A stretch of 64,000 bases of DNA, taken from assembly GCA_963924565.1 (NCBI GenBank), contig OZ004609.1, positions 24,552,001 to 24,616,000 of the forward strand, read 5' to 3'. Numbering within the stretch: position 1 is the stretch's first letter; every line of letters starts with the position of its first letter. Origin of the DNA: Ascidiella aspersa (taxonomy: Eukaryota). Of this stretch, positions 4,626 to 57,800 are shown piece after piece. Below the pieces are notes generated by a model, which saw nothing but the letters and a program-made list of their open reading frames with translations, was not told where the DNA came from and did no database searches. A program made the position numbers and the translations under genes.

Positions 4626-7600
4626 AGCTCTTAGCAAGTCTTGCGCTCGTATCCGGTCAAAGCTCTTTTCGCTTTGTGAGAAGTGATATCCGATGTTTTG
4701 CTTTTGTTCTTCTTGGTTTGGTGATGTATAAATCCACTAGAGTTGCGGTAAGTGCATCCCGCGTCACACCAGAACGCGTACTAACACACAACACGGGCTT
4801 TCCTACGCCTCTTAGGTTGACTGCATCACGAGTACAAGGTTTAGCTTGTGCAAGTCAAATAGCATTTAACTATACAGCTATACAAGCTAAAGACGACTTC
4901 CTAAAACCTCTGGGAGAGCTAAATTTGATCGACTGACTAACTAACAAATGCTGAGTCGCGTTTTACAACAACACAACAAAACCAAAGACCGCGCTTTTAA
5001 CCTCTGGATGACCATACTCCAAGTAGAACAATCTCAGTCCTATTTGTTTGAATATTCCACGGCAAATTTACCTTATTCGCATGTGCCTCTATTCTCCAGC
5101 TTTCAACGTTTTTATTTTTACTTGACAAACCATCGTTGTGCTAAAAAGCTCGTTCAAAATGACAACAACAGTCAATTCTAAATTTATGCTTTCTACTTAT
5201 AAGTATATTCGAATCCCTCCCCAATCTAAAGACAAACATTCCTAAAAACCTCCAACAGTTTTAAGTTGAAATCGTTTGCACACATGACTACTCTTACGGA
5301 ATTCACTCGTTCGCACCTGATCAACACTGGCACATAGACAACACGTTCGGCCAGTCGTATCGCGCAATTCGACATGCCCATTGTCCTATTGAAATCATCG
5401 GCAAAGCGCAGGCCGCAGAGTGGCCTATACAAGCAACTCGTCGCATGAGCGCACAGCCAACAGGTGACCGCGCGGACGAGGGCCGCCCATTCGACTAAAC
5501 AACTTTCCGACGACCGGCCGAAGTTTACGGTTCGGATCGGCAACGGGCTTCGAGTGACTACAAGTTTCGACAATCGTTCCAAGTAGTTCCAACAGCGCCA
5601 AAGTTAAGCCGCGCCGTGTGTAGTTAACGCGCAATTGCGAAGAAGATCTACCCTGCGTCCGGGACACTCGAGCGCTCGCCTGAGCACCCACTCGGTGCAG
5701 AAAGCCGCGTTCAACAAACGGGCTGGAACGCTGAAGCCGAGTACAATTATTATGAGCTTCGGCCGCTTTTAGATGAAGACCTGCGGCGTTGTTTGCATTT
5801 TAGAGCCGTTATTTTTAGACACAGCGGTTAACGGTTTCGCTAAAGGACTCAACAAAATCAGACATTAAAAACTTTAAAATTGTAAAGCCCTTATTGTTAT
5901 TGCTTCCAAATTTTTAATTAAAAAGAAAACTTCTCTGCATCACACTCGGCAATGTAAACTGTAAAGCATCATCTTTCTGGATTAATCTTACAACCCTATG
6001 CGAAGATATTTTTCAACTACAGTTCAAAAATCTTACACAGCAATATTTATGGGGAAGGCGTAAGAACGTGGCATTCAGGTGACAAAAAATGCCATTTCAG
6101 ATATCAACGCGCACGCACACACACACACTTAACTGCTCGCACGCGCAACAACCAGACGAGGCTGGAGCACAGGCGAAAAGGCGGCTACGTGTATTGGGCC
6201 CGCAAAAGCGGCAGCGGCAGCTCCGGCAAGTGTACGAACAATGCGTGTGGGAGCGCGCACAAAAGGCAGGCCAACAATGGGCCAGGGCAATACAAAACAA
6301 ATAGAGGCACTACGGGCCGATCGAGGTTTATCGAGGGCTGCGTGACGAGCCATACAAGGCAGGCGGCGACTGGCAGTTCATATCGTGTTGTAAGTAACAA
6401 GCGATAAAACCCCGGTCGAGTCCCGCCATTGCGCGATTGGTGGCTGCAGAGTAATTCGCGTCGCCAGCAGATTTTTGGGGGCAATTTTGCGTCAAAAAGC
6501 GACCCGCCAAGTAGCGGGCATTGTGCGCGAGAAAGGTAACACCGAGATGCGCGCCTTGTACTCCTGGGATTGCTGATGGAGGCACAAGGAGACGCGGTTT
6601 AGCCCGGGCGAGTAACTGAAATGCAGATAAATTGATGACCCTGCAACACTGTATACCTATTGAAGGCTGATGGGCTCGAATGGGTTATTGAAATTTGCTA
6701 TCACTCTGCTAAATAATTTAAAAAAAGCTAAACGCGCTACATGGCCTTATTTAAATCTAATAAAATCTAAAATTAGTCTCAAATTACGTAAAAAAATTTT
6801 AACAATGCTCAAAGATTAGTACCAGAAGCGCACAACGATTTTAAAATTTGATAGAAAAATTATTCTTGCTAACAAGGGTCTATTTTTTAAATCGCCATCA
6901 TTTGGTGCAACATTCAGCATTTTGTACAACCGCAAGTTAAGTCTGTGTTTCACGAAGTATTTATAAATATTCCCTTACAACTGCTGTGAAAGGTTCACAT
7001 GTATGACACACACTCATAACAACACACCTGCTGCTCGCAACTTAAACTGCTGGGCGTGGACAAAGGACTTTTCGACACTCAATGAAAGCAGCGGAAACTG
7101 ATTGGGGCGGGTATTTAATCCGGCCCAACGTGGCGCAACTGTATCGTTTTCGTGGCTAGGAATACGACCAAAGAAAGTCATTTAGGCGAAACGAGAAGAA
7201 GACCATTGCTTTTGAATCGGCGTAGTATTGGAACAGTGCGATGTACAAAATTGCCTGTTGCGGATGTCTTTTTAAACGCGAAAGTCAACGAAACACGAAT
7301 TCAAACAACATGCTTTTACTTCATCCTGTTTTAACTTCAACAATAATTCTACAGTAGCCATCAGTGTTGCTTATTTTACGTTTTAAATTTTAGTAGTGTA
7401 AAATGCGCTTTTCAAAAAGTAGACATATAAACGTCACATATATGTTGCTATTAATGTATGAAAAAGGGCAATTACTGCAATGTTACTCTTCAATTTCCCT
7501 AAGGTAAACCTAAATTCCTAATCAAATGCTTAAAAAGGCAGTGTGTAAAACACTAGCATAATGTGAAAAACATTCTTACTTAAAACGTACATACATAGAC

Positions 7601-37303: not shown

Positions 37304-40300
37304 ATGTAAAGCAAGCCAATTCAAAGATTTAACGTTAAACTATTAAAACTGGTAAACTCGCTTGATTTTGGCAATGACTCAACTAAAAATATCAATAACG
37401 CAACATATAACAAGCAATTATGGTAATGTATAAACAGTGTTTTTCAAGCCTTCCGACAGGGTTACAGCAAAACTAAATCGTAAAAAACTAAACTAGCGTT
37501 AACCATATGCTTTCAATCGCAAAAGCTAACTTACCATGTTACGCAACGACTTGTTTCAAAGTTTAGGCGTGACCTAAAGATCTTTAAACGTCGCCTTGTT
37601 CTATAGTTTTATCAAATATACAACGTCTTATAGTGTCAAAATGGTAATAAATTACGAAACGTTTTGTGTTTATAAGCCAATTTTAACGTGTTTGTTATAT
37701 CGCCATTTTCAAATAAGATTATTATTTTTAGTTGATTTTAATCGTTCTTTACATAGTTTTAATTTTAACAACAAACTAATAAAAAACGTTTTTTAATTTA
37801 TAAGCCATTGTCTTATTAATGATAGTTAGTTCCCCAATAAAGTACTGAATCGTAAATATTGCTGCCTATACTGGTTAGTTAGGAATGCGTTCAGCACGGA
37901 CATGCGCTGGTCGCTGCTGATAGGCCTGGCACAGCAAATTCGCGCGTGCTCTCCGAACACACGCGAACTTTTACCACGCGAGTAGTTGAATTGCTTTAGG
38001 TTACGGAAATATCGTATTAAGTTCGGCCTGCTCTAAAACGTATTCGAATTCGCGATTTTGGAGTCCAATCCTACCGACATACAGAATTTTTACATGCTAC
38101 GATTATCGGTTACCACGTTTACAATGTAATAACAAGAATAAAATTATTAAAAAATAAAAAATGATGCTTTACATTATTACGCCTGTTACAAGAATTTCGT
38201 ATGATAGCTAAAACAATAATATATTAGGGCTGAAATGTAAGTAAACGGGTTGGATTAAAATCTAAACACGATTGAACAGAAGCGACGAGCAAAGTAAAGG
38301 CGCGCAGTAATACGACAGGTAAAGATTGGCGAAAATCCAAAAATTGCCCCTGAAAACAAGGTTGGGTAACTTTGGGGGAGAAATTGCGGCAAACTCTAAA
38401 GAAAAAGTCGGTAGAACACCTCGTGACATGACTGGTCGGTATCGTGGTTACAGGTGAAATAGCTTAAAGGTTACCAAACAGGAACAAGTGCTACATTTAA
38501 CCGCACTTTATTCGGCGGTCGTCACCGCTTGCCCACCTAATCGGCGAGAAATCACCGCGGGATCTCGCTTTATGGTGTAAAATGCTCGCCATCTCGCCGT
38601 AACGCAAGTGAGAAGCAACGATAACATCGCGCCATCCGCTAATCGGCTTCCACTCGGCGATCGTAGCAAAGCTGACGTTAAAGTGAACGCCGTCGTGCAG
38701 CCACCAACACTTCCCCGCTTTTGTGTGAACAATTGAGGGGGTTGCTAACGGTCTCTGCGGTTTTACCACCCTAGTTTGCTGACTACTTTTCATAATTGCC
38801 AAGCAACGCAGCAGCCAGCGGAATGCTGGGCGCTTTTATCAGCAGTCATGCTGACGCTTGACTGCATCCGCCTGTCCGCAGAAGCAACTACGAAAGATTA
38901 TAAACGATCTGTTCTGTTTCGAACAAGTTGGTGCCAAATCAACCGCAAGTCTTGGTTGTGTGGAGGCGGCATGCTGGCGGTTGAAAGACCGTGTCAGTTA
39001 CTTTAAGCGCTTGCCGCCGTCACCGTTCTTAACTGCGTTTCTGCACGACTGGCAAGTGCGCCGCGGTATGCGGAAATATGAGTTGCCACTGGATGATGAA
39101 CAGCGGCGTTCTTGAGCGAGGCCTAACGTGTAATGTTCGCTATACACTAAATACACAAACTTTGGTTGCGCGATCGCCACGGGAAGCATGTGGGCGGAGT
39201 CGCGGTCAAGCAAGTACACTTTTCTTCAAGTTGCGAAACGAACGGGCGATGCTATATTAATATCGGCAAACGCGGCTGCTGGTCCAGCTTATGATATCGG
39301 GTTGCCAGAGAAGAATCGGTAACAACGCCCACAGCATGTCTGCCATTACATTTACTTTGCTGAGAAACAATCTCAGCCGAGAGATAACGGTGGATCCCAT
39401 TGTTGTCGCGGCGAACCTTTTCACGTTGTTTTAGCGACGAAGCGAGACTGACAAGCCTTCTGTGGCCTTCTAATCTTGGGAGGAACACGTGGACAAAATA
39501 CATGGCCATTTCGTATGGCGCCAGGCTCCATTTGCTAATCGAACTTTGTTTGCTTTTCTGTTGTTAAGCCGAGTGCTGAAGCGTATTCAAACTATTCTAG
39601 GGAAAAAAGGGAGCCGACCGTTTTTAGTGGCCACGGGCGGACCCTATTTTGCGAAACCCGATAGGCGGCCATTGATCGCCAGGCACAGTATCTTCACCAC
39701 GGCGGTTTGATTTCGCGCCCATTCTGTTTTTGTTCCTCTTGCGACGCAACGTGCGTCGAAAGACGTCAAAAAACGCCTCGCAGAAAGCCGCAAGTCGAGT
39801 AAGTGCTCGGCCCATTATCGATTTCGCCCCCCACCAGAAACGTGCGAATTCGACTCCAGATTGAATTTCTCCGCCCTATTTTTATTTTCACGCTCCAGGT
39901 TTATTTTTGTTTGGCGATCTTGCATCTGACTCTTTCGAAGTTTAGATCGCGGTTGATGTCACGAAACTTTCGGTCATTTGTTTGTGTTTTTAAAACGCCT
40001 GCGAGCTCAAAGCACGTAGAGCGTTGAGTCGAAGGCTTTTTACGTACAGTATTTGTTTAACTCGATATTTTCTCGTGCAATTCCGATTGCCTGGGGCACA
40101 CCTGAACGACTTACCGCCTACGTCAGAGTGTAACGGAAGTTGACGATTTTTGGATTTGAATCTTGGATTTTAAGCGACTTTGTTTGTTGTTGCTTTTGCG
40201 ACGCAACAGATAAACGTCAGTTGGATTGAATCTTGTGGCGCTCACGGCTCACATTATTATTCAAGATAATTTTTTTTGAGTTTAGTACATACATTGACTA

Positions 40301-43057: not shown

Positions 43058-43108
43058 TAATTCTAAAAGCCTGGTGAAAGTCACTTAACCTTCTACTGTC
43101 TATTGCAG

Positions 43109-43301
43109 AACGATCTTATGCGCATGGAGCCGGCCTACGGTCGTATAGCGTTCACGTGGGTCTTCTTTGTCTTCGGCGCCACGAGCAACATCTTTGTACT
43201 CTACTGCCTCTACAAGTGGAAAAGGAAGACGCACGTGCAAGTGATCACCCTCCATCTCACCCTCGCCGATCTGGCGTTCACCTTTTTTATCATGCCTATG
43301 G
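43109..43301 (+). CDS. GNRHR: GnRH-receptor-like exon, TM1-TM2
   Basis: NDLMRMEPAYGRIAFTWVFFVFGATSNIFVLYCLYKWKRKTHVQVITLHLTLADLAFTFFIMPM has class A N1.50 and LADL (D2.50). ttgcag acceptor, G|gtgagt donor, phase 0 to 1. Confidence 0.95.
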
Positions 43302-45557: not shown

Positions 45558-45664
45558 ACGCGATGTGGCAGCTGACCATTGAGTGGGAAGCCGGCAATGT
45601 CATGTGCAAGGTTTGTCAGATGATGAAGCAATTCGGGATGTACGTCAGCTCGCTCATGGTGCTC
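45558..45664 (+). CDS. GNRHR: GnRH-receptor-like exon, ECL1-TM3
   Basis: (D)AMWQLTIEWEAGNVMCKVCQMMKQFGMYVSSLMVL follows the GnRHR pattern DxxWxxTxxWxAGxxxCK...K.F.MY. cag acceptor, gtaagt donor, 107 nt, phase 1 to 0. Confidence 0.95.
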
Positions 45665-48600: not shown

Positions 48601-49608
48601 TGTAGGCCTGATTGAGTTAATTAGCGTTACAGAAGACCTGTCGACATATAATGAAGACAGCCAGGCCCGAAGTTGTAATTCGTGTTTTCGATTAAAATAA
48701 CATGTGAGTGTCAGTTATGGAACACAATATGGCAAAATATTTCCATCGAGGAAAGCCGTCTTATTGTGTGTTCAAAATTTAAGATATGTTACACACAAAA
48801 AAGATTCTGTTACACAAAAAGTAGAGCTCAACACAGCTTGGGGCGACTCTGCTGCCAATAACGCGAACTACAACTTTATTTAGCTAATTAAAAATCAATA
48901 TCGTTTACAGTCTGTTTGGAACCACGTCAGCTTAAAATGCGCTAACAATAAATGAAAAAGCAATTCGACCCTTGTAAGTTGCGTTGGTAACTTACTACTC
49001 ATATTCCAGGGAGTAACGGTATAAAACAATTTCTTTATAGGTATTTTTCTTATACACCAAATTAAACCTTATTTGTTACGATTCTACTAGAGTTGCTGTC
49101 ACTTAATTTAAAAAAAAAGTCCCATGCCTGTTTCCGATTTAAGTAAGCTCATGAGTGGCAGATGCGCACAACTTCCAACATTTAGAAGCGTGTGTGCAGT
49201 TTTAATCTTTATGAAACTTGCCCTTCAACACTTGGGTTAAGGCATATAACTCGCCTGTCATCACGAACTATTGGCGTGGAAATTAACTGTCGTCTTAAAG
49301 TTGGCCTTTACTTTGATTTCCATTTTCTGGAAGCAATACGAATCTGGAACGTTTGGATTTAATTAACTTGTATATCATAATCTGTTGTCCTAATGGTTTA
49401 AAATATTTGAAAAGTTCCCGACGTTTCACAGTTTCATATGTGAAAGGAAAACAATATGAGCGAACATTAAAAAAAAATAAAAACACGTTTCAAACCTTAT
49501 AGAAGTAGCAGGTCGAACTTGAATATCTAAGCACGATATTCGTTTCGAATAAGAAGTATTGATGCTGTGAATGTGCAAAGTGCTTTCAATCTGCTTGTTT
49601 TCTTACAG

Positions 49609-49734
49609 GTTACTGCACTTGACCGTGTATTTAGCATCCTGTCGCCCATGTCGACCGCCACTCAGCAAAGAACGCGAACAAAGTTTCTTCTCATTGGTGC
49701 TTGGACTACAAGTTTTGTCAGTGCCCTGCCGCCG
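49609..49734 (+). CDS. GNRHR: GnRH-receptor-like exon, DRx motif, ICL2, TM4
   Basis: VTALDRVFSILSPMSTATQQRTRTKFLLIGAWTTSFVSALPP. ttttcttacag acceptor, gtaatt donor, 126 nt, phase 0 to 0. Confidence 0.95.
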
Positions 49735-50166
49735 GTAATTGTTATGCTATAGCCGAAAGTAAAATCTTGTTTTGCAATATTTATAAATTTAAAAAAAGTT
49801 TGTCTGTACTTCGTAGTTGCGAAAGTGTTTGCTTTTTTATTGCTAGTAAATTGCCACATGAAGGTTTGAGAGTTGCCAGAGCGCGAATCAGGTGTATTTT
49901 ATTTGCCCAGTATCCCCGGAGACAACTTAAGCACGTGAAAAATACTTATCTGATTGTCTCTGATGGCTTTTAACTTAGGATTGCAACCAACAAATCTAAG
50001 GCGTTAAGTTGTGAGAGCTTAGAATAACAATTCATTGGTGTCCACAACATGACTGTAAAAAGGCCCGAATAGCAAATCACCCCTTTTTGACCTTTTGTCA
50101 AAAAAATCTCGACATTACGGCGCCTGATATTTCCAAGTAAATTAGCCCAATTTTGACCTTCCGCAG

Positions 50167-50377
50167 CTGTACGTTTTCTCCCTGTCGACGGACAGTCTGT
50201 GTCCGGACGCCCCTCCGTTCCGCCAGTGCGTGGACTTCATGATGGTGAGCGAAACGGTGAAGAAGGTGTACCTCTTCTTCACGATGGCCATGAGCTTCAT
50301 CATCCCTTTCGTCGTCACAGTGGTTTCCTACAGCCTCATCATCGCCGAGATCTCAAACATGTTGCGCAGAGACCGAA
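50167..50377 (+). CDS. GNRHR: GnRH-receptor-like exon, ECL2-TM5-start of ICL3
   Basis: LYVFSLSTDSLCPDAPPFRQCVDFMMVSETVKKVYLFFTMAMSFIIPFVVTVVSYSLIIAEISNMLRRDR has the QCV ECL2 Cys and FxxP...Y of TM5. GC3-rich codons, ccttccgcag acceptor, A|gtaata phase-1 donor. The ORF track shows a different frame here. Confidence 0.93.
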
Positions 50378-50532
50378 GTAATAACTGATGTAAACAATCG
50401 ACAATACCTTGGCGCTATTACGTGACCTTGCGCCAAAGGAAAATATGTTAAACAAACACATTTATATGTTTGTTTTGACAATACCTCGTGTTTTATGAAG
50501 TTTGTTGTTTTAAACCGAGTTCTTCTGAATAG

Positions 50533-50580
50533 CCTCTGGCATCTTGGGTGGTGCCTTTTACTCTGTTTAGGAACCAGACA
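50533..50580 (+). CDS. GNRHR: Candidate GnRH-receptor exon or exon remnant, end of TM6 and ECL3
   Basis: PLASWVVPFTLFRNQT ends at a strong ACA|gtgagt phase-0 donor that fits the TM7 exon. The WxxP motif lies at the expected distance from TM7. Its 5' tag acceptor is phase 0 and does not fit the phase-1 donor at 50377. Confidence 0.5.
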
Positions 50581-51202
50581 GTGAGTGAAAACTAACCTTG
50601 GAAACCTAGTCCGCTTTGCTTTGCTTGGCTGTTCAACCGACAAAATATTTTGTTCGCCGTTTCGAGTAACATGCAAAACAAAACAGTTGATCATAGAAAG
50701 AGACCAAATATAGTTTCACAAAGTTCTCGTACGTTCGCACTTTCAACCATGAGTTGAAAATATAGTGCAAACAAGCTACCAGTTAAGCTATTTTTTTATA
50801 ACATAACAGCATCTTTCGTAGTAGACGTGAATGGTATTTGTTTTACGTAAATCGTGGCGCGCAAAGCAACATCAGTACCATAGGTTACGTGGCCGATTTA
50901 CGGAATTCGATAACTTCGATAAATTAGGTAAAAAACAACAGTCATCAAAAGTAATATTTGTATAATATTGAAACAAATGCAAAATAGCCGAAGCGCAGCA
51001 ACTTGCGAATTATGTGGACTATATTGCTAGGATATCTTACAGCCCTTGTTGGATACCATCGCGACAAAATACATAAGTGTTAATAGAACCTCATTTTCAC
51101 ACTTAAGTTAAGCAATTTCAGCACGATTCAAACGTTGACAACAGCAAATGCCACGAGAAAACCTACAGTAAAACTGTGACTTGAAAAGCTCGTTTTTTGC
51201 AG

Positions 51203-51348
51203 GTGTTTCTGATGCAGGTCCTCTACATGCTGCTTTATCTGCCGCCCTTGGTCCACCCTATCCTTTACGGATTCTTCGTCAGCGATTTCCGCAAGCGATT
51301 TGCTTCCATGTTTAGCGTTTGCATAAAGCATCCAAGCGCCCATCGCAG
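51203..51348 (+). CDS. GNRHR: GnRH-receptor-like exon, TM7 and helix 8
   Basis: VFLMQVLYMLLYLPPLVHPILYGFFVSDFRKRFASMFSVCIKHPSAHR has HPxxY in place of NPxxY, followed by an FR helix 8. ttttttgcag acceptor, AG|gtaaaa donor, phase 0 to 2. Confidence 0.92.
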
Positions 51349-53457
51349 GTAAAATTATCCGGAACTAAATGTTACCGATTTGACGTGTTCACTCATGGTT
51401 TAAGTGTTGTTGTACTATACGTCGCTTTTTTAGCGTTCAGAGTTTCTAATCGTTCGGAAAGCATTAATTAGGACACTTAGGTGTGCACCAGATAGAAACT
51501 GTGAACGGTTAGTATTGCATTCCATTTTTTTTATAGTGAGGTTGAATAGATTTTAGTCACACTAACTGATTGTGCGATACGTGTCGAATCGTCTTTATTT
51601 AGTTGAAGTCGATTTACTTGACCTATTTGGCTTTGACATACATTTTGCAAACTACATTACAGATCTGTTCATATAAAGGAGTTAAAACGCTATGGTGCAA
51701 ATCCGAAGGATTTATGCCTCTGTTCATCCCAAGCATTTTACGCATAGAAGCCGTTAATTTATTAACCGATTTTCTCAAGAACATTGCATTCACGTAGGGT
51801 CTTTCCCCTGTCTTATCATAAAGTGCAAATTCTCTTTCCTAACGAATTACATGCGTATAGCATGTCAATTCAATACAATACACGCTTGTGACTATAGTTT
51901 TGCAGTTGCACGTAGTTTGCCCGCCGAAATACAGTATAGCCATGCCAATATACGTCTGCTTAGGGCCACAGATCGAATTTAAATACTTCGACACCTCTAT
52001 AAACTAAATTTCGTTAATCGCACAATTTTTGTAAACCTCTCTTGGCAGCTTATGAATGAAACTTGAAGATCGCGACTTATGATATACAAGTGGCAATAAA
52101 TTTGTTAAACGAGATTTTCACATTTCTGGTATTTGAGTATTGTTAAAAGTCTTTTAAGGTTGACCAAATTTCACACGTGTATTGGGATTTGGTTTTGTGC
52201 GACTTAATTATAATGGCACGTGCCACATACCGATAATACTCTTCGCCTTAACGGTTTTTTTAATATAAAAGAGACAAGTTGTAAAAAATGTAACAATTTT
52301 TAATGTTTTTGTATTGGTTGTATCATGTAGAAATACCACAGTGTTGGGACACAGCGACGAAAGGGGATTAATTGTAAGTTATTTTCCAGGCTCGGCTACG
52401 TGCCAGTCCTTCTCTGGGCGTTCGTGCTTTCCTTATTTTCGTGTTTTTTGTTCCAAACCAACCAACAATTGTGTGACGTTTTGCTTTTAATCATTCTTTT
52501 AGCATGAATACTTTTTTCCTCATTTTTTCTCCAACGCGTGTATGGGCTTATACCAGACTCGACACGTTGATCCGTGCATTGCTAGTTATTTTCAAAAGTG
52601 CACATTCTTATGTTTTTACTATTATTTGTCACGTTAACCAGACAACGCAGTCTTTATACCACCATCCCTATACGTTTAAGTTATTCTGCGAATTTTGCGT
52701 TGCTTGAAGAGTGTCGATTTGTTTTTGGCAATATGCACAATGTTGTCAGCGTAGCGCTTGGCTTACCAAACAACACCACAAGCAATTAGTAAAATAATGC
52801 TTGGCACACATAGCTACGTTATGCTGCACACCGCTTTAACCAGATTCGTTGTATCGAATTCTGGAGTAGAGTATAAGGACTGGTAACTCCTTGAATGTTT
52901 AATAAATTAAACAGGTTCCTCTAAATACAGACCTGCACAACGTACGGCCATTCGGTCACCACGATAGGTAGTACTGAGGTCAAGGTCTTCCCGGCTATAT
53001 TTTTGCCAACTTTTATCTGCCCGTGTAATTTCTGTTAAATCAGACTTTAAAATCAGTTATTGCGAGCAACGTGCAAATCTCTGCTATAGACCTAATTCGA
53101 TCTACAGTTAAATTCTAAAAGTTTTGCAAGTTTAATCCTTGTTTTACGTCATGTTATGACGTAGCTTTGTAACGTCTTTACAATAAAATTGTCATTCAAC
53201 TTCAGTATGCGGCCGTGTAAATGTTTTTTTTTTCTTTTTGCGGCCCTTGTACCACTTTATTTTGTGCAGGTCTGTCGTTAGAGGTAGCCAGCACTTAACT
53301 TGAGAAATTCAAGCAAAATTCCATTCGACATTTCGATTCGACGACGAATTCGTGAATTTTGCATTGTTGGGTAAATATCGTGCGTTCTGCAATGCACAAC
53401 ACCAAACAAAAGCAGCACAACACAGTATACTGAATTATGTAACCGGCATTCTTGCAG

Positions 53458-53590
53458 CGACGGAGACAGCAAAAGAAAGTCGTTGGTCTCCCGGACCCCG
53501 TCCACCATGGTGACGTCACTAGAATTCCAGCGGTGCCCTGACGCCCGAATGTCCCTCGGAAACGAACGCACTAACTGTATTGAGCTGTGA
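53458..53590 (+). CDS. GNRHR: Candidate terminal exon A of the receptor (C-tail)
   Basis: attcttgcag acceptor. The phase-2 reading gives (S)DGDSKRKSLVSRTPSTMVTSLEFQRCPDARMSLGNERTNCIEL-stop. GC-rich and Ser/Thr-rich. Confidence 0.6.
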
Positions 53591-54645
53591 GTCCCCCCGA
53601 ATGCAAGCTGTCCCGTGTTGAATATTGTTGTCAGTGGCTTTGGTGGCAGTTAATCGGTGTTGCGACCGCGAGGTTTTGCTAGTGTAACATCGCATCGGCC
53701 TTGTACAGACTGTCGATGACCACGACTGATCTGCATTCGAAACCTTCGCGCTTTTGTGTACGCCGTATCACGCGCATTGTTCGTGTTCTGCCTGCTGATT
53801 TGTATGTGACATTTGACGCAATCAAGTATTACCGAGAATTCCGGGCATTGAAGTCCCCTTTTTGTTTTGCACCGTTACGCTGAAATATGCTGACGAACGA
53901 AACGATTTGTTTGGAAAATTTTGTCTTTGCTAAGCTTATAACCTGTTGAAAGGCGATTTGATTTGCAAAAAAATCACTAACCTTATCTACGGACATGACT
54001 TCGTTGTGATTTACGAGGCACGCATGCTGTTGGTATCCGGTGCACGTTACACCTTGCATGTGACACTAGCACTTGTTTCTAGTTTGCCTTACAAGCTTCC
54101 CAGTTGTTTGTGCTTTGCGGTTGTCGTGATTAACCTGTAACGTGAACTTTACTTAACCGGTTCGGCTCACCTGTAACGTCCCAACAAACTACACCTAACA
54201 TGAACTCATAGACTTTCCTCACGAAACTAAAAAGGCCTTAACAAAAATTGTATATGCCGTATTTTTTATGCTCTGGGAATTCATTATATGGAGTGCGCGG
54301 CCTATGATAATTCGGCAACCATGTCGGACGGAAAATAATTAGGGGCTATGTTAAATCACATATTTGGAAAACGCAACAATCTTATCATTTCCTTGAGTTG
54401 AAAAAAAAGATTTCCTAATTTTAGGTGCATTTTTTTAACTAATCGACAGTGTTTGTCGTCCGACATGGAAAACTGCTGATTTGCTGGGAAAAAGGGCGCA
54501 CTTGTTAAGGCTATTCTAAATTAACCTATAGCAAAACAGGGATGCAGCGAAAATCAAAATTGGCCTTCTCCACGCAGCAAATCTGTTTTTTTTTGTTCGA
54601 AACCAAACAAAAACGCGCCCTATAAATGTACTTAAAAACTTACAG

Positions 54646-54892
54646 AAAGGAACGAAGCCATCCACGACCCCTGATACGCAACGAACAGGCTTCGAAGGCG
54701 GGAGGGGCAGCAGAGGAAGGCTGCATCGAACCTCGCAGCAACTTTGACGCGCGCTGCCTAGACGAACGGCCAAACGCAAGCACGCCCGGCTCGGCCCGCA
54801 AAAGCGTCGCCACCGAAATGGTGATTCTGGACGGGGGCGCTGGTAGCGAAAAGGACCACGCCTCGCCCCTAATCACGCGCGATGTACTTTGA
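54646..54892 (+). CDS. GNRHR: Candidate terminal exon B of the receptor (C-tail)
   Basis: cttacag acceptor. The phase-2 reading gives (R)KERSHPRPLIRNEQASKAGG...ARKSVATEMVILDGGAGSEKDHASPLITRDVL-stop, 81 open codons in a GC-rich island. Confidence 0.6.
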
Positions 54893-57800
54893 TCTGAACA
54901 ACCCTTGACGAGCTTCACGTACGCCAGCGCAAGTTCCAGAGAACAACAAGCTCGAAAGTTGTTTTCTTGCTGACTTCTCCAAAGTTTCGTTTCACTGATT
55001 TGGAGGCGGGGAGAAATGCGGATCTACTTCTCGCGGTTGCATTGGTCGTTAGACGCCGCAGACATCCGAATATAGGATATTTTTTTATGCGTCGGCTTGC
55101 ATGTGTTTGCTTATGATTAACCTCAAGCGGCTGTTTTACATTTTTGAGCTAACTCGTCCTATTTCTGCTGCGGAACGCTTCGCAAGTCGTTCTATGCCAC
55201 AGGTATTAAAAAATTTCAAAGACAATGTAAAATCTAATACGAAGGAAATATCGGGACGGTCTGCTTTACCTTGAAAAGTGGGCACCAAATGCGTGGCGAT
55301 TTTCGTTTGCACTGCAGAAAAGGCTTAACTTAATCATTTTCGTCCTATGTGATAAGACTTGGTTCTCGTTCGAGCACTACTACTGCTGCTTTGCGCTGTC
55401 CCGTTGAGTTCACACTGTTGTGTTGCGTTGTCGGTCTTAAGTATTCGTGTATGCACTTGTAATCGTCTCTTCTGTGGTTAGATTTCAATTTTAAATGAAT
55501 CCCTAAAAGTTCCGCGACAAATTCAAACAATGTTATGTTTCTGTTCGCATATTGATTTCATAAAAAATGCCCTGAGAAAGAAAACTAAAACAAAAAGCTT
55601 GAAAGTTTACCTGAGATTTGTTTGAAAAATCAAATTAACGGCCCGCCAGGCCAACATCCATATATGCAACCACCTGAAATAGTGTTTAACATTGAATCCG
55701 CGGCCAAAATTTGTAAATATCGCCAGGAGTCTAACTGTATTTAATTTCTTGCTTTACTTTTTACTTTTGCTTTGCTTTTTATTTTTAAATTAGTGTTCAC
55801 TTTGAAATACTTAAGCAGTGTCAATTTTGGCAAACTCAACGGGTTTTGGTAGTCACGGATATATCACGATTTCTTCTACCTAACGTGAAGCTATGGCGAC
55901 TTCTATACACCTTGCCTCTAGCATAATACAAAATATTTATGTTGAATACCGCAATTAATACGTTTGGACTTACATTTGTGGGCCCATGGTAGGTTGACCA
56001 CAAATTAACAAAAAGGCAGAACAACCGAATTATAAAGAATGTAAGTAGCTTTAAGAATAGGCAAGATCAGCATGCACTATACTCTATAAAATAATATTTT
56101 TTTACAAATGTTGTTACAAGCGACGTTTCTGGCCTTTTGATAAATCAGGCTTAAGCGATTATATGGGCATGTGACGAATGCGTCCAAGGTTTGACGTTGG
56201 TGACGACCTTAGGCCGGTCATTGTGCAAATGTTGCCTCTGAATCGACGCCTACGTTTCTGTGTGTTATTTCCTAACGATAAGCATCCCCCGCCCAACAGC
56301 GTCTTGTACAGTATTTTCGTCGAGGTTGTTTTAAAACCAGTTGCCCGTAACAACGTCTCGCTTAAGTGAAATTAGCCACAAGACATTAAATAGTGCTTGG
56401 CGTGATTTGCGTTTAAGCTTGAAACTACAAATTAAAAAAAAAAACATTAAAGACTGTATTGAAACCAACTCGTAAAAAATATCTTTACTTTTGTAGTAGA
56501 CTAAATACTGTATTTGTTGTGTTGTATTTATTCTTCTGGATTAATCTACTCACAAATAAGAAAAATGTATTCGTTTTTACCTTGCACCAGTTTTGACAGG
56601 CACTCAGAAATAAACCAAAATGACTTAGCGTTAGTCAAAGAGACAAGCCACTAAGACCAATATCTAAAACCGAAATTACTCGCGCAAACAGAATATGAAG
56701 ATAAAAATAGATGTGGTAACATTTCGGCTGACCACCATAACTTAACTTTAACGTTTTTAAAATTTATTAGATTTTATAATTTGTACTTTGTCGGAAGTAC
56801 AAAGGAATCTATCCATTGAGAAATACAGGATAGTTTAGGTTTAGGACTTTGTCAAGGTACAAGGTATAGTTGTTGGCAGACATTAGGATTATCGTGGCAT
56901 TTATAAAGTTCTTATATAATTTATTATTTTTCATTCCGTGTTAAAAATGTACCTGATCCTATAAATTGAAATTCCTCCAGTTCAATCAAATTATTTTATT
57001 AGAAATGGGGAATCTGTGACTCGAAGGTTAAAAAATTTTAAGACTTATTTCAAACTAACCGTAACGATCCTGGTTCCAATCAAAAATCTGTAATGCTCGT
57101 GGTCAAAATTTCAGAGCTTCGGGTTCAACACTAAAGCGAAATCCATCTGGAATTCCTCCAAGTGTTCAAACTCCAACTACTAGATTTGCGTTTTGAGAGA
57201 GCCTTCTTAGACAAAAGGCGACCTGCGTATGAAAGCTATATCTAAGTGAAAATTTTCATAGAATATAACTCTCTAAAATGAAGGTTTCTTCAACTTAATC
57301 CATTTTTTCGTTTTCCGTCTTTTATGATAAACATCAGCAAGAGTTTAAGGAGTATAGGTATATTTTATTTTGTGTGTGCCCAATGTGTCACGTCTCCTTG
57401 TAAAAGAAACGAATTTGCCAATTTTAACCAAACTTTCGCGTGGCCAGCTATTTGAGTTTAAATTGACCCAATTTCGGTTTGGTTGGCGCCTGGTGAAGAT
57501 TAACTACATTAAAGTGCTTAACGGTCACACGTTTTTATCACAAAATTGTTAGTGAAATATGTTACGACCCACCGAAAACTTTGTGAGTTTGGTTTGGCCC
57601 GCAAGTAGGAAAAGGTTTCCGTTAGAAGGGGGCGAAAAAAAGCAAAAAGTTTCATCACCTTTAAAAAATATTAGGCTGGACAGCATGTTGAAATAAACTA
57701 CGTACAGTAGGCCTATAGGCATAAATATATAATTATACCTTACAATCCATATTGCAGTCTTTGAGGATTTAAGTGGCACCCTCATGAAGATCTATTTGTA

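What the first reader, a model, noticed from the sequence alone, without database searches (positions are those of the whole stretch)
50378..51202. GnRH-type receptor with no findable ICL3/TM6 core: a broken or rewired 7TM receptor
Seen: the TM1-TM5 and TM7 exons are intact. The TM5 exon ends in phase 1 and the TM7 exon starts in phase 0. The 825 nt between them contain no (C/L)WxPYY TM6 segment in any frame I read, and I found none elsewhere on either strand. Only a 48-nt piece (50533-50580, PLASWVVPFTLFRNQT|gtgagt) looks like the TM6 end and ECL3. The 155 nt before it are too short for about 38 missing codons plus two introns. Established: TM6 (CWxP) is essential for class A GPCR activation, and truncated GPCRs can act as dominant-negative or heterodimer modulators. 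Inference: this is a recent deletion or null allele, an assembly deletion, or a deliberately non-signalling receptor. Read-through of the TM5 exon ends in RSNN-stop; direct splicing to the TM7 exon frameshifts.
Basis: partly seen in the sequence, partly recalled or inferred. Interest (0 to 1): 0.8.

Follow-up and report, generated by a model that had tools for sequence, protein, structure and literature searches.

The report
Sea squirt GnRH receptor missing exon
In this sea squirt assembly a hormone-receptor gene of the GnRH type has lost the single exon for its sixth membrane helix, most likely through a young deletion that makes a broken copy, not a new kind of receptor.

Summary
The core observation holds. 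The gene is the counterpart of Phallusia mammillata GnRHR3: 161 of 250 aligned residues are identical over five exons. Those exons are E1 43109-43301, E2 45558-45664, E3 49609-49734, E4 (TM5) 50167-50377 and the TM7 exon 51203-51348. Two paralogs on the same chromosome carry one ICL3-TM6-ECL3 exon between their TM5 and TM7 exons, entering in phase 1 and leaving in phase 0. Here that exon is absent. The rest of the gene is undecayed: 49 of 52 family-invariant residues are kept, and the 3 listed variants in the 7TM exons are all synonymous. RNA coverage is sparse but exon-shaped. Direct E4-to-TM7 splicing shifts the frame and gives a TM1-5 protein with a 37-residue foreign tail. A second DNA sample matches the assembly from E3 to 51101. 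Exactly there, its two contigs carry 588 and 473 unaligned letters, so that animal probably has at least 1 kb more in this intron; its content could not be seen. Best reading: a young, probably still segregating deletion (null allele). A deliberately rewired receptor is unlikely. The decisive junction reads were out of reach.

The parts
43109..43301 (+). Exon E1: juxtamembrane N-terminus, TM1, ICL1, TM2 (..GATSNIFVLY.., ..LTLADLAFTF..). It starts at an acceptor (ctattgcag|AAC) and ends in phase 1. In-frame ATGs lie at 43118 and 43124. The upstream N-terminal exon was not found.
   Evidence: P0001 q47-108, E 4.9e-20; both paralogs have an intron at the same place
45558..45664 (+). Exon E2: ECL1 with the GnRHR-type W..T..W.AG motif (AMWQLTIEWEAG), Cys3.25 and TM3. 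Enters in phase 1, leaves in phase 0.
   Evidence: q99-138, E 2.2e-9; 12 of 12 invariant residues kept
49609..49734 (+). Exon E3: end of TM3 with LDRV (the DRY position), ICL2, TM4 (..IGAWTTSF..). Phase 0 at both ends.
   Evidence: 7tm_1, E 3.4e-4; q133-190; 6 of 6
50167..50377 (+). Exon E4: ECL2 (FRQCVDF), TM5 (..MSFIIPFVVTVVSYSLI..) and the start of ICL3 (NMLRRDR). Ends CGA A|gtaata in phase 1; read-through gives RSNN-stop.
   Evidence: 7tm_1, E 7.4e-6; q175-249, E 3.4e-24; 18 of 18
50378..51202 (+). Single 825-nt intron where the paralogs have intron + ICL3-TM6-ECL3 exon + intron (about 1.7 kb + 170 nt + 3.6 kb in paralog A). It holds no TM6 coding sequence in any frame and is unique in the genome.
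50533..50580 (+). Not supported as a remnant; treated as intron.
   Evidence: -0.8 bits; RNA depth 0.07 in its bin
51098..51101 (.). Place (CACA) where the two contigs of DNA sample X2 stop matching the assembly and run on for 588 and 473 unaligned letters. Probable site of an indel of at least about 1 kb between individuals; candidate deletion junction.
   Evidence: table 8 (records 1 and 2), table 1 (2 records run over the ends), table 2 (the depth of 111.9 in this bin is accounted for by these two contigs alone). This is my inference; the letters were not shown.
51203..51348 (+). TM7 exon: VFLMQVLYMLLYLPPLVHPILYGFF, helix 8, ..VCIKHP... Starts in phase 0 and ends in phase 2. It is read in the wrong frame if joined directly to E4 (stop at 51313-51315).
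   Evidence: (q303-352, E 1.3e-13); 4 RNA reads cross 51235 and 51277
53458..53590 (+). Candidate C-terminal tail exon, in phase with the end of the TM7 exon (AG|C...), stop TGA 53588-53590. RNA depth is 0 in its bin.
54646..54892 (+). Second candidate C-terminal tail exon, also in phase (AG|A...), stop TGA 54890-54892. RNA depth is 0.31 in its bin.

Best explanation
This is the sea squirt's counterpart of Phallusia GnRHR3, a class A GPCR of the GnRH-receptor type. On the assembled haplotype a genomic deletion has removed the one exon that encodes ICL3, TM6 and ECL3, together with parts of the two introns around it. The two introns are thereby fused into one 825-nt intron. The deletion is young, because nothing else in the gene has decayed. 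It is probably still segregating in the population, so that other animals carry the intact gene. The allele should splice E4 directly to the TM7 exon, whose acceptor is strong. That moves from phase 1 into phase 0 and gives a protein with TM1-TM5, a 37-residue out-of-frame tail and a stop 33 nt before the end of the TM7 exon. This product cannot signal. At most it could behave like other 5-TM truncated GPCRs, which hold partner receptors in the ER. Shown: absence of the exon, the conserved phases, the frameshift, the intact state of the other exons, and low exon-shaped transcription. Inferred: that the loss was a deletion, its age, that it segregates, the splicing outcome, and any dominant-negative effect.
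For: Orthology. Phallusia GnRHR3 (P0001) is the best hit of E4 among 1.84 billion representatives (E 6.7e-20; named). It is the closest of 10 references in 4 of 5 exons, 161/250 = 64% in all against 54% for the next. Expected architecture. Both own-genome paralogs have one ICL3-TM6-ECL3 exon (..LICWGPYY....LACWTPYY..). It is entered in phase 1 and left in phase 0, the same phases as the E4 end and TM7 start here. Absence. TM6 HMM: 89.6 and 40.2 bits on the paralogs, at most 9.7 bits in the window. P0001 residues 250-302 are unmatched at this locus. Youth. 49 of 52 family-invariant residues are kept, while functional relatives differ at 0-12 of 52-64. All splice sites of the five exons are intact. 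The 3 listed variants in the 7TM exons (50355, 51235, 51277) are all synonymous. The TM7 exon is as conserved as the others (30/49 against P0001). Transcription. Stranded RNA run X8 gives depth 0.57, 1.27, 1.13 and 1.42 in the bins holding E3, E4 and the TM7 exon. It gives 0-0.12 in the intron bins 49894-50090 and 50288-51075. Segregation. X2 record 1 (14,352 nt) matches 49500-51101 with 4 other letters and 6 gaps and then has 588 letters unlaid. Record 2 (1,697 nt) matches 51098-52330 and has 473 letters unlaid on the other side. No other X2 contig contributes depth in that bin. Because these tails sit inside contigs, I take them to be low-copy sequence. The two high-copy repeats of the stretch are instead marked by depth peaks and many loose ends.
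Against: The letters of the X2 tails were never seen, so they may be an unrelated insertion. A second indel of 1,344 nt lies only 0.6 kb away (joint 51673->53018), so large indels are common here. My reading of which side the unlaid letters lie on rests on the tool's coordinate convention. I inferred that convention from the 29-30-nt overlaps of neighbouring contigs and from '2 records run over the ends'. No RNA joint reached the listing threshold of 3 reads, so the E4-to-TM7 junction is predicted, not observed. E4's 3' part has almost no RNA depth (0.03). Raw DNA reads of X7 dip to about 1 in 50682-51075 against about 5 elsewhere, which this reading does not explain; the tool warns that dips are no finding. 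Only 40 of 118 variant rows were shown, so the synonymous count is incomplete. The first coding exon was not found, so 'otherwise intact' is not complete. No intact allele has been seen.
Confidence: 0.55

Rival explanations
1. Fixed recent loss. The whole species lacks the TM6 exon of this gene, which is a young unitary pseudogene that is still transcribed. The extra sequence in sample X2 is an unrelated intronic insertion.
For: The assembly and the X2 contig agree over E3, E4 and the first 724 nt of the intron, with no TM6 exon there. Raw reads of X7 cover all 30 of 30 bins with no listed insertion longer than 1 nt inside 50378-51202 (table 4). Large indels are frequent in this stretch (joint 51673->53018). 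GnRHR genes are often lost or broken yet still transcribed in other lineages, such as mammalian GnRHR2 (passages read in PMC5732264).
Against: There is no second defect in about 740 nt of remaining 7TM coding sequence or in its splice sites. 49 of 52 invariant residues are kept. All 3 listed 7TM variants are synonymous. The one place where X2 departs from the assembly lies inside this very intron.
Confidence: 0.22
2. Assembly drop-out. The sequenced animal has the exon on both haplotypes, and about 1 kb was lost when the assembly was built.
For: No listed record bridges 51098-51101 (table 8). X2 seems to have more sequence exactly there.
Against: X1, the likely source sample, holds 0.98 of the sampled 31-letter words of 49550-51400. 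The stretch is unique and not repetitive, so there is no obvious cause for a collapse. Real large indels between haplotypes are demonstrably common here.
Confidence: 0.07
3. Rewired but functional receptor. The mRNA stays in frame without a canonical TM6. One route is two micro-exons (50439-50467 and 50533-50580, with introns of 61, 65 and 622 nt), giving a very short TM6-like stretch. The other is the upstream acceptor at 51189 (gaaaag|CT), giving a TM1-5+TM7 protein. Such a protein would be kept as a non-signalling partner of the two intact paralogs, as Ci-GnRHR4 is in Ciona.
For: Both paths are open in frame. The TM7 exon looks constrained in its normal frame: 2 of 2 listed variants are synonymous and it is 30/49 identical to Phallusia. 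Heterodimer modulation by an orphan GnRHR paralog is known in Ciona (passages read in PMC7697785). Truncated 5-TM and 6-TM GPCRs can modulate partners (passages read in PMC3477067).
Against: There is no homology to TM6 (-0.8 bits). The sites are weak: the acceptor gcgccaaag has no pyrimidine tract, the donor is TAT|gtttgt, and the 51189 AG sits 14 nt upstream of a far better acceptor. 26 in-frame single-exon AG..GT candidates occur in the 825 nt by chance. RNA depth over the micro-exons is 0.03-0.07. The loops on both sides of such a TM6 would be at or below the shortest known; this last point is my own reckoning from recalled receptor sequences, not a tool result.
Confidence: 0.06

Closest known systems
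Phallusia mammillata GnRHR3 (P0001, 370 aa; name given by UniRef)
   Same: 64% identity (161/250) over the five exons. Shared features are the ECL1 W..T..W.AG-type motif, LDRV, FIIPF..VVSYSLI, VHPILYGFF and the ..VCIKHP.. tail. It is the best match genome-wide.
   Different: Phallusia has the full ICL3-TM6-ECL3 stretch (..ARKKTFILTSIVAATFLLLWGPYY..); this locus has nothing for residues 250-302.
The two GnRHR-type paralogs of the same genome (chromosome C3 at 22.84 Mb and 37.50 Mb)
   Same: They share the intron positions and phases around TM5, TM6 and TM7, and the intron before TM1.
   Different: They keep the TM6 exon (89.6 and 40.2 bits). Their TM5 exons are only 52% and 35% identical to this gene's.
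Naturally truncated 5-TM GPCRs: CCR5-delta32, the 5-TM human GnRH receptor splice variant, GHS-R1b (review PMC3477067, passages read)
   Same: The predicted product is TM1-5 plus a foreign tail caused by a frameshift. CCR5-delta32 is likewise a segregating genomic deletion. Such proteins do not signal and often retain the full-length receptor in the ER.
   Different: Here a whole exon is missing, not 32 bp or a splice choice. No protein, no partner and no effect have been shown.
Ci-GnRHR4 of Ciona, an orphan paralog that modulates R1 and R2 as a heterodimer (review PMC7697785, passages read)
   Same: It is a GnRHR-family member that raises neither calcium nor cAMP on its own.
   Different: The passages I read describe R4 as a receptor paralog with a short tail, not a truncated one; I did not test its 7TM state here. 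This gene groups with R3-type sequences and lacks TM6 outright.
Mammalian GnRHR2 genes disrupted by frameshifts, stops or missing exons yet still transcribed (PMC5732264, passages read)
   Same: A GnRHR-family gene is disabled in some lineages while its transcripts persist, and 5-TM products are debated.
   Different: Those are old, multiply damaged genes. This one has a single lesion and no other decay.

Membership tests
Rhodopsin-family (class A) GPCR, Pfam PF00001 7tm_1 | Match to the 7tm_1 profile | tested here: inconclusive
Searched exon by exon. 4 of 5 exons hit 7tm_1 in colinear profile positions (2-40, 42-77, 79-120, 133-186 of 260) with E 0.031, 0.052, 3.4e-4 and 7.4e-6. Each is below the 30.5-bit whole-protein cut-off; the TM7 exon had no hit. 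The relative P0001 carries PF00001.
Rhodopsin-family (class A) GPCR, Pfam PF00001 7tm_1 | Seven transmembrane helices, including TM6 with the CWxP-type motif | tested here: not met
   No TM6 in the window or at this locus. The assembled allele encodes TM1-5 and a TM7 exon that falls out of frame.
GnRH receptor family, ascidian GnRHR clade | ECL1 motif W..T..W.(A/G)G followed by Cys3.25, and the ECL2 Cys in QC(V/I)D | tested here: met
   AMWQLTIEWEAGNVMCKV and FRQCVDF align with all 10 references. 12 of 12 invariant columns are kept in E2 and 18 of 18 in E4.
GnRH receptor family, ascidian GnRHR clade | DR at the DRY position, and H/N-P-x-x-(Y/F) in TM7 followed by helix 8 | tested here: met
   TALDRVFSIL and LVHPILYGFFVSDFRKRF are identical or near-identical to P0001.
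GnRH receptor family, ascidian GnRHR clade | TM6 (L/F/C)W(G/T)PYY, invariant W, P, Y, Y in 11 of 11 aligned relatives | tested here: not met
   Alignment A1 gives the invariant columns. They are absent here.
GnRH receptor family, ascidian GnRHR clade | Closest relatives are named GnRH receptors | tested here: met
   The best hit of E4 is Phallusia GnRHR3. The next full-length hits are Ciona intestinalis and C. savignyi GnRH receptors.
GnRH receptor family, ascidian GnRHR clade | Binds a GnRH peptide and signals through cAMP or calcium | not testable with these tools
   This needs expression and ligand assays. Without TM6 the assembled allele is not expected to signal (established knowledge of class A activation).
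5-TM truncated GPCR acting as dominant negative | TM1-5 kept, followed by a non-native tail and an early stop | tested here: met
   By translation only: E4 ends in phase 1, the TM7 exon read from 51205 gives 36 codons and then TAG, plus one junction codon. The junction itself was not observed in RNA.
5-TM truncated GPCR acting as dominant negative | Protein is made, pairs with a full-length receptor and lowers its surface expression | not testable with these tools
   No protein or interaction data exist. RNA is low: 4 reads on the TM7 exon in about 6% of run X8.

The most novel reading that the evidence does not exclude
The TM6-less GnRHR3 gene is fixed in this species and kept by selection. 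It would make a 5-TM protein, or through the 51189 acceptor or the two micro-exons a 6-TM protein, that cannot signal itself. Instead it would tune the two intact GnRHR paralogs by pairing with them. That would be a genomically hard-wired version of what vertebrates do with truncated splice variants and Ciona does with the orphan R4.
Probability: 0.08. Interest if true: 0.65.

Novelty: new member of a known kind. Interest (0 to 1): 0.27.

Why it matters
If the reading is right, this is an ordinary loss-of-function allele caught in a reference genome. Anyone annotating this assembly, or counting GnRH receptors in ascidians, would wrongly score the species as lacking a working GnRHR3 or as having an odd 6-TM receptor. 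It also gives a naturally occurring knock-out allele of a neuropeptide receptor in a sea squirt. That could be genotyped by a simple PCR across 50377-51203 and used to ask what R3-type signalling does. Only if the loss proved fixed and the truncated product were retained would it bear on the wider question of how truncated GPCRs act as modulators.

Tried and rejected
1. A cryptic TM6 exon in the interval, elsewhere in the window or elsewhere in the genome. Rejected by regex, the TM6 HMM with positive controls and the whole-genome search with P0001.

2. The 48-nt piece as a remnant. Rejected: -0.8 bits.

3. A degraded TM6 read by eye in other frames (for example ..TFICLF*QYLVFY.. at about 50455-50510). 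No frame scored above 1.2 bits in the interval, so I dropped it.

4. In-frame rescue.
- Single exons: 26 candidates, none TM6-like.
- The two micro-exon path and the 51189 acceptor: possible, but the sites are weak and there is no support. Kept only as a low-odds rival.

5. A transposon having replaced the exon. The 826-nt query is unique in the genome and has no tandem repeats.

6. The hydrophobic ORF 52390-52507 as an extra helix exon in phase with the TM7 exon. Rejected because it lies inside 51674-53017, which is absent from some X2 and X7 molecules.

7. Finding the intact allele as ORF fragments in the big protein collection.
- One search found no candidate.
- One search returned only two unnamed ascidian TM6-exon fragments (P0027, P0028).
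- It did not return paralog A's own TM6 ORF, so this species' contigs are not visible there and the blank says nothing.
- One search gave no names.

9. The N-terminal exon. A motif search upstream gave one ORF without a Met at 39843; it was not convincing.

10. A shuffle null for the HMM timed out and was not repeated. The noise level was taken from the non-exon hits in the two paralog loci (5.7-8.0 bits).

11. Print status. I found no paper on a TM6-less ascidian GnRHR in the listings. These cover open-access papers only; supplements were not opened.
Full report
What is there. The finding sits in a class A GPCR gene on the + strand of a sea squirt chromosome (window = G000:C3:24552001-24616000; genome 308.6 Mb in 75 contigs). 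Reading the sequence and its stop-to-stop frames gives five 7TM exons:
- E1, 43109-43301: TM1-TM2, leaves in phase 1.
- E2, 45558-45664: ECL1-TM3, phase 1 to 0.
- E3, 49609-49734: DR motif, ICL2, TM4, phase 0 to 0.
- E4, 50167-50377: ECL2, TM5 and the start of ICL3, leaves in phase 1.
- The TM7 exon, 51203-51348: enters in phase 0, leaves in phase 2.
Two candidate tail exons, 53458-53590 and 54646-54892, are both in phase with the end of the TM7 exon. Searched one by one, four of the five exons hit Pfam 7tm_1 at colinear profile positions, each below the whole-protein cut-off.

Which gene it is. E4 alone, scored against 1.84 billion representative proteins, found 22 proteins at E up to 0.001. 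The best is P0001 (E 6.7e-20, 63% identity). UniRef names P0001 GnRHR3 of Phallusia mammillata; the next full-length relatives are Ciona intestinalis and C. savignyi GnRH receptors. In an alignment with 10 full-length ascidian relatives, to which the five exon peptides were added as separate fragments, this gene is closest to P0001 in 4 of 5 exons. Overall identity is 161/250 = 64%, against 54% for the next relative. The tail motif ..VCIKHP.. is shared only with P0001. P0001 searched against the whole genome finds three GnRHR-type loci, all on C3: this one, one at 22.84 Mb (paralog A) and one at 37.50 Mb (paralog B). This locus is the best match.

What should lie between E4 and the TM7 exon. 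In both paralogs the TM5 exon ends in phase 1 at the same codon as here (..ARDR G|gtgagt and ..KAK G|gtaaga). It is followed by a single exon that encodes ICL3, TM6 and ECL3 (..TLTFLICWGPYYGKGIYDWF.. and ..LSFLACWTPYYFTGIIFW..) and ends in phase 0. In paralog A a TM7 exon starting in phase 0 then follows. Paralog A's two introns there are about 1.7 and 3.6 kb.

The exon is absent.
- The 825 nt 50378-51202 hold nothing like it.
- A TM6 profile built only from nine proteins of other species scores 89.6 bits on paralog A's exon and 40.2 bits on paralog B's. The best other hits in those two 10-kb loci are 5.7-8.0 bits.
- In the whole 64-kb window, six frames, the best score is 9.7 bits, on the other strand about 26 kb away.
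- A first run used an 11-sequence version of the profile (paralogs included).
- P0001 residues 250-302 find no partner at this locus or on any unplaced contig.
- The interval is unique in the genome and has no tandem repeats.
I therefore confirm the missing TM6. I do not confirm the 'remnant': its S-W-x-x-P-F and N-x-T|gtgagt are what chance can give in 825 nt.

What the assembled allele would make. Read-through of E4 stops after RSNN. Direct splicing of E4 (donor A|gtaata) to the strong acceptor ttttttgcag|G reads the TM7 exon one base out of frame. The result is one junction codon, 36 further codons and TAG at 51313-51315, 33 nt before the exon's end. The product would be TM1-TM5 with a foreign tail.
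In-frame escapes exist. One is two micro-exons, 50439-50467 and 50533-50580, with introns of 61, 65 and 622 nt. The other is an AG at 51187-51188 that would add TRFLQ before the TM7 exon. Against them: the interval offers 26 in-frame single-exon AG..GT candidates by chance, the sites are weak, and nothing in them resembles TM6.

The rest of the gene is not decaying.
- At the 52 alignment columns that are invariant in all 10 references, this gene agrees at 49. The three differences are V>I, S>G and G>S in TM1.
- The same leave-one-out count for the references gives 0 to 12 differences.
- All splice sites of the five exons are canonical.
- Of the variant rows listed by read laying (40 of 118 shown), three fall in 7TM exons and all three are synonymous: 50355 TCA>TCG, 51235 CTT>CTC, 51277 TTC>TTT.
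- In the tail exons one variant is synonymous and two change residues (L>V, P>Q).
- The TM7 exon, which the assembled allele cannot translate in frame, is as conserved as the others (30/49 against P0001).
The lesion is therefore young, or the TM7 exon is still used.

I laid 49500-55400 (5,901 letters) with an RNA run (X8), a raw DNA run (X7), contigs of a second sample of the same species (X2), and contigs of a run labelled as another organism (X4).

RNA. Only about 6 in 100 of X8 was read and 123 reads were laid, nearly all with the first mate on the - strand. In most stranded libraries that means RNA of the + strand. Depth in the bins that hold E3, E4 and the TM7 exon is 0.57, 1.27, 1.13 and 1.42. 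It is 0 to 0.12 in the intron bins 49894-50090 and 50288-51075. Four of four reads cross 51235 and 51277. No RNA joint reached the listing threshold of three reads, so what E4 and the TM7 exon are joined to stays unknown. E4's 3' part has almost no depth (0.03), and the tail-exon bins have 0 and 0.31.

DNA. X7 covers 30 of 30 bins, and no insertion longer than one base is listed inside the interval. Its depth falls to about 1 in 50682-51075 against about 5 around it, which I cannot explain; the tool warns that such dips are no finding. X2 record 1 (14,352 nt) matches 49500-51101 with 4 other letters and 6 gaps, so in that animal too there is no TM6 exon in the first 724 nt after E4.

The loose thread that matters. 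X2 record 1 is laid only at its positions 589-2186. Record 2 (1,697 nt) is laid at positions 1-1224 on 51098-52330. I take the record coordinates to be in the record's own orientation, for three reasons:
- Record 2 and record 4 then overlap by 30 nt at their physical ends (52301-52330).
- Records 4 and 8 overlap by 29 nt (53147-53175).
- Exactly 2 records are said to run over the ends of the stretch.
On that reading record 1 continues for 588 letters past 51101, and record 2 continues for 473 letters to the left of 51098. Neither continuation is laid anywhere on the stretch. The depth of the bin 51076-51272 (111.9) is exactly what these two contigs give, so no third X2 contig carries the assembly's junction. 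X4 record 10 (201 nt) likewise matches 50932-51082 and then runs on for 50 unlike letters.
My inference is that X2 has at least about 1,031 nt (588 + 473 - 30) between 51097 and 51102 that the assembly lacks, with CACA at both edges. Because these tails sit inside contigs, I take them to be low-copy sequence. The two high-copy repeats of the stretch are instead marked by depth peaks and many loose ends. The letters were among the '157 more not shown', so I do not know whether they hold the TM6 exon. A second large indel (51674-53017, joint 51673->53018 with 16 other letters, seen in X2 and in 4 X7 reads) shows that such differences are common here. An unrelated insertion therefore remains possible.

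Weighing.
- Young, still segregating deletion allele, about 0.55. It explains a clean single-exon loss in a gene that is otherwise under visible constraint, in a species with many large indels, together with extra sequence in another animal in the same intron.
- Fixed, very recent loss, about 0.22. It explains the same facts less well.
- Assembly drop-out, about 0.07. X1 holds 0.98 of the words of the stretch and the region is not repetitive.
- Designed non-signalling receptor, about 0.06.
- I leave the remaining 0.10 unassigned.

Comparison with what is known. Truncated 5-TM GPCRs, including a 5-TM splice variant of the human GnRH receptor and the deletion allele CCR5-delta32, do not signal and commonly hold the full-length receptor in the ER (review PMC3477067, passages read). 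In Ciona the orphan paralog Ci-GnRHR4 raises neither calcium nor cAMP by itself and modulates R1 and R2 as a heterodimer (review PMC7697785, passages read). Mammalian GnRHR2 genes are often broken yet transcribed (PMC5732264, passages read). The allele here would work like the first group if its protein is made at all. It is not a member of the functional GnRHR family in the strict sense, because the defining TM6 was tested and not met. Listings for ascidian GnRH receptors with heterodimers, truncated splice variants, Phallusia, and tunicate pseudogenes showed no report of a TM6-less ascidian receptor. These cover open-access papers only, and supplements were closed.

Limits.
- The protein collection did not show this species' own contigs.
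- The first coding exon is not located.
- The splice outcome is predicted, not seen.

Verdict. The most likely meaning is mundane: a null allele in a reference genome. It is worth a note to annotators and a quick PCR or read check.

Noticed in passing
window 51470-51673 and 53046-53242, with 51674-53017 between: There are two high-copy repeats: X7 DNA depth is 88 and 263 against about 6, and X2 word depth is 2,037 and 14,142. They bracket a 1,344-nt segment that is absent from some molecules (joint 51673->53018 with 16 other letters, in X2 and in 4 X7 reads). This looks like a polymorphic insertion, perhaps a mobile element, in the intron after the TM7 exon. + strand RNA depth of 2.4-4.8 lies on 52258-52848 inside it.
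   Followed up: partly
window 52390-52507: An ORF in phase with the end of the TM7 exon begins with a helix-like hydrophobic run (RLGYVPVLLWAFVLSLFSCFLF..) and follows a good acceptor (ttattttccag). It lies inside the polymorphic segment above, so I do not take it for a receptor exon.
   Followed up: partly
window 43067-43126 and upstream: E1 starts at an acceptor 11 codons before TM1, and both paralogs have an intron at the same place. The N-terminal exon of this gene was not found. If translation started at the ATGs at 43118 or 43124, the extracellular N-terminus would be only about 7-9 residues. The juxtamembrane stretch (NDLMRMEPAYG) is unlike the L.F....L.RV of the relatives.
   Followed up: partly
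window 50682-51075: Raw DNA reads of X7 fall to a depth of about 1 (0.07+0.81 and 1.14+0) against about 4-6 in the neighbouring bins, while the X2 contig covers the stretch with few differences. Unexplained; it may be another haplotype difference or a read filter.
   Followed up: no
G000:C3 at 22.84, 24.60 and 37.50 Mb: All three GnRHR-type genes of this genome lie on one chromosome. Two further weak 7TM hits lie 100-125 kb downstream of this gene (C3:24713065 and C3:24739708).
   Followed up: no
TM7 exons: window 51203-51348; L010 about 5978-6120: This gene, 9 of the 10 aligned ascidian GnRHR relatives and paralog A have H-P-x-x-(Y/F) where class A receptors usually have NPxxY; P0012 is the exception. 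The usual motifs, and the DPxxY of vertebrate GnRH receptors, are recalled and come from no call.
   Followed up: no
runs X4, X5, X6; X4 pieces on window 50005-55333: Runs labelled as three other organisms hold 5-17% of the words of this stretch. X4 gives 151-212-nt contigs with 0-3 differences at depth 2-7. So DNA of this species, or a very close relative, is present at low level in runs filed under other names.
   Followed up: no
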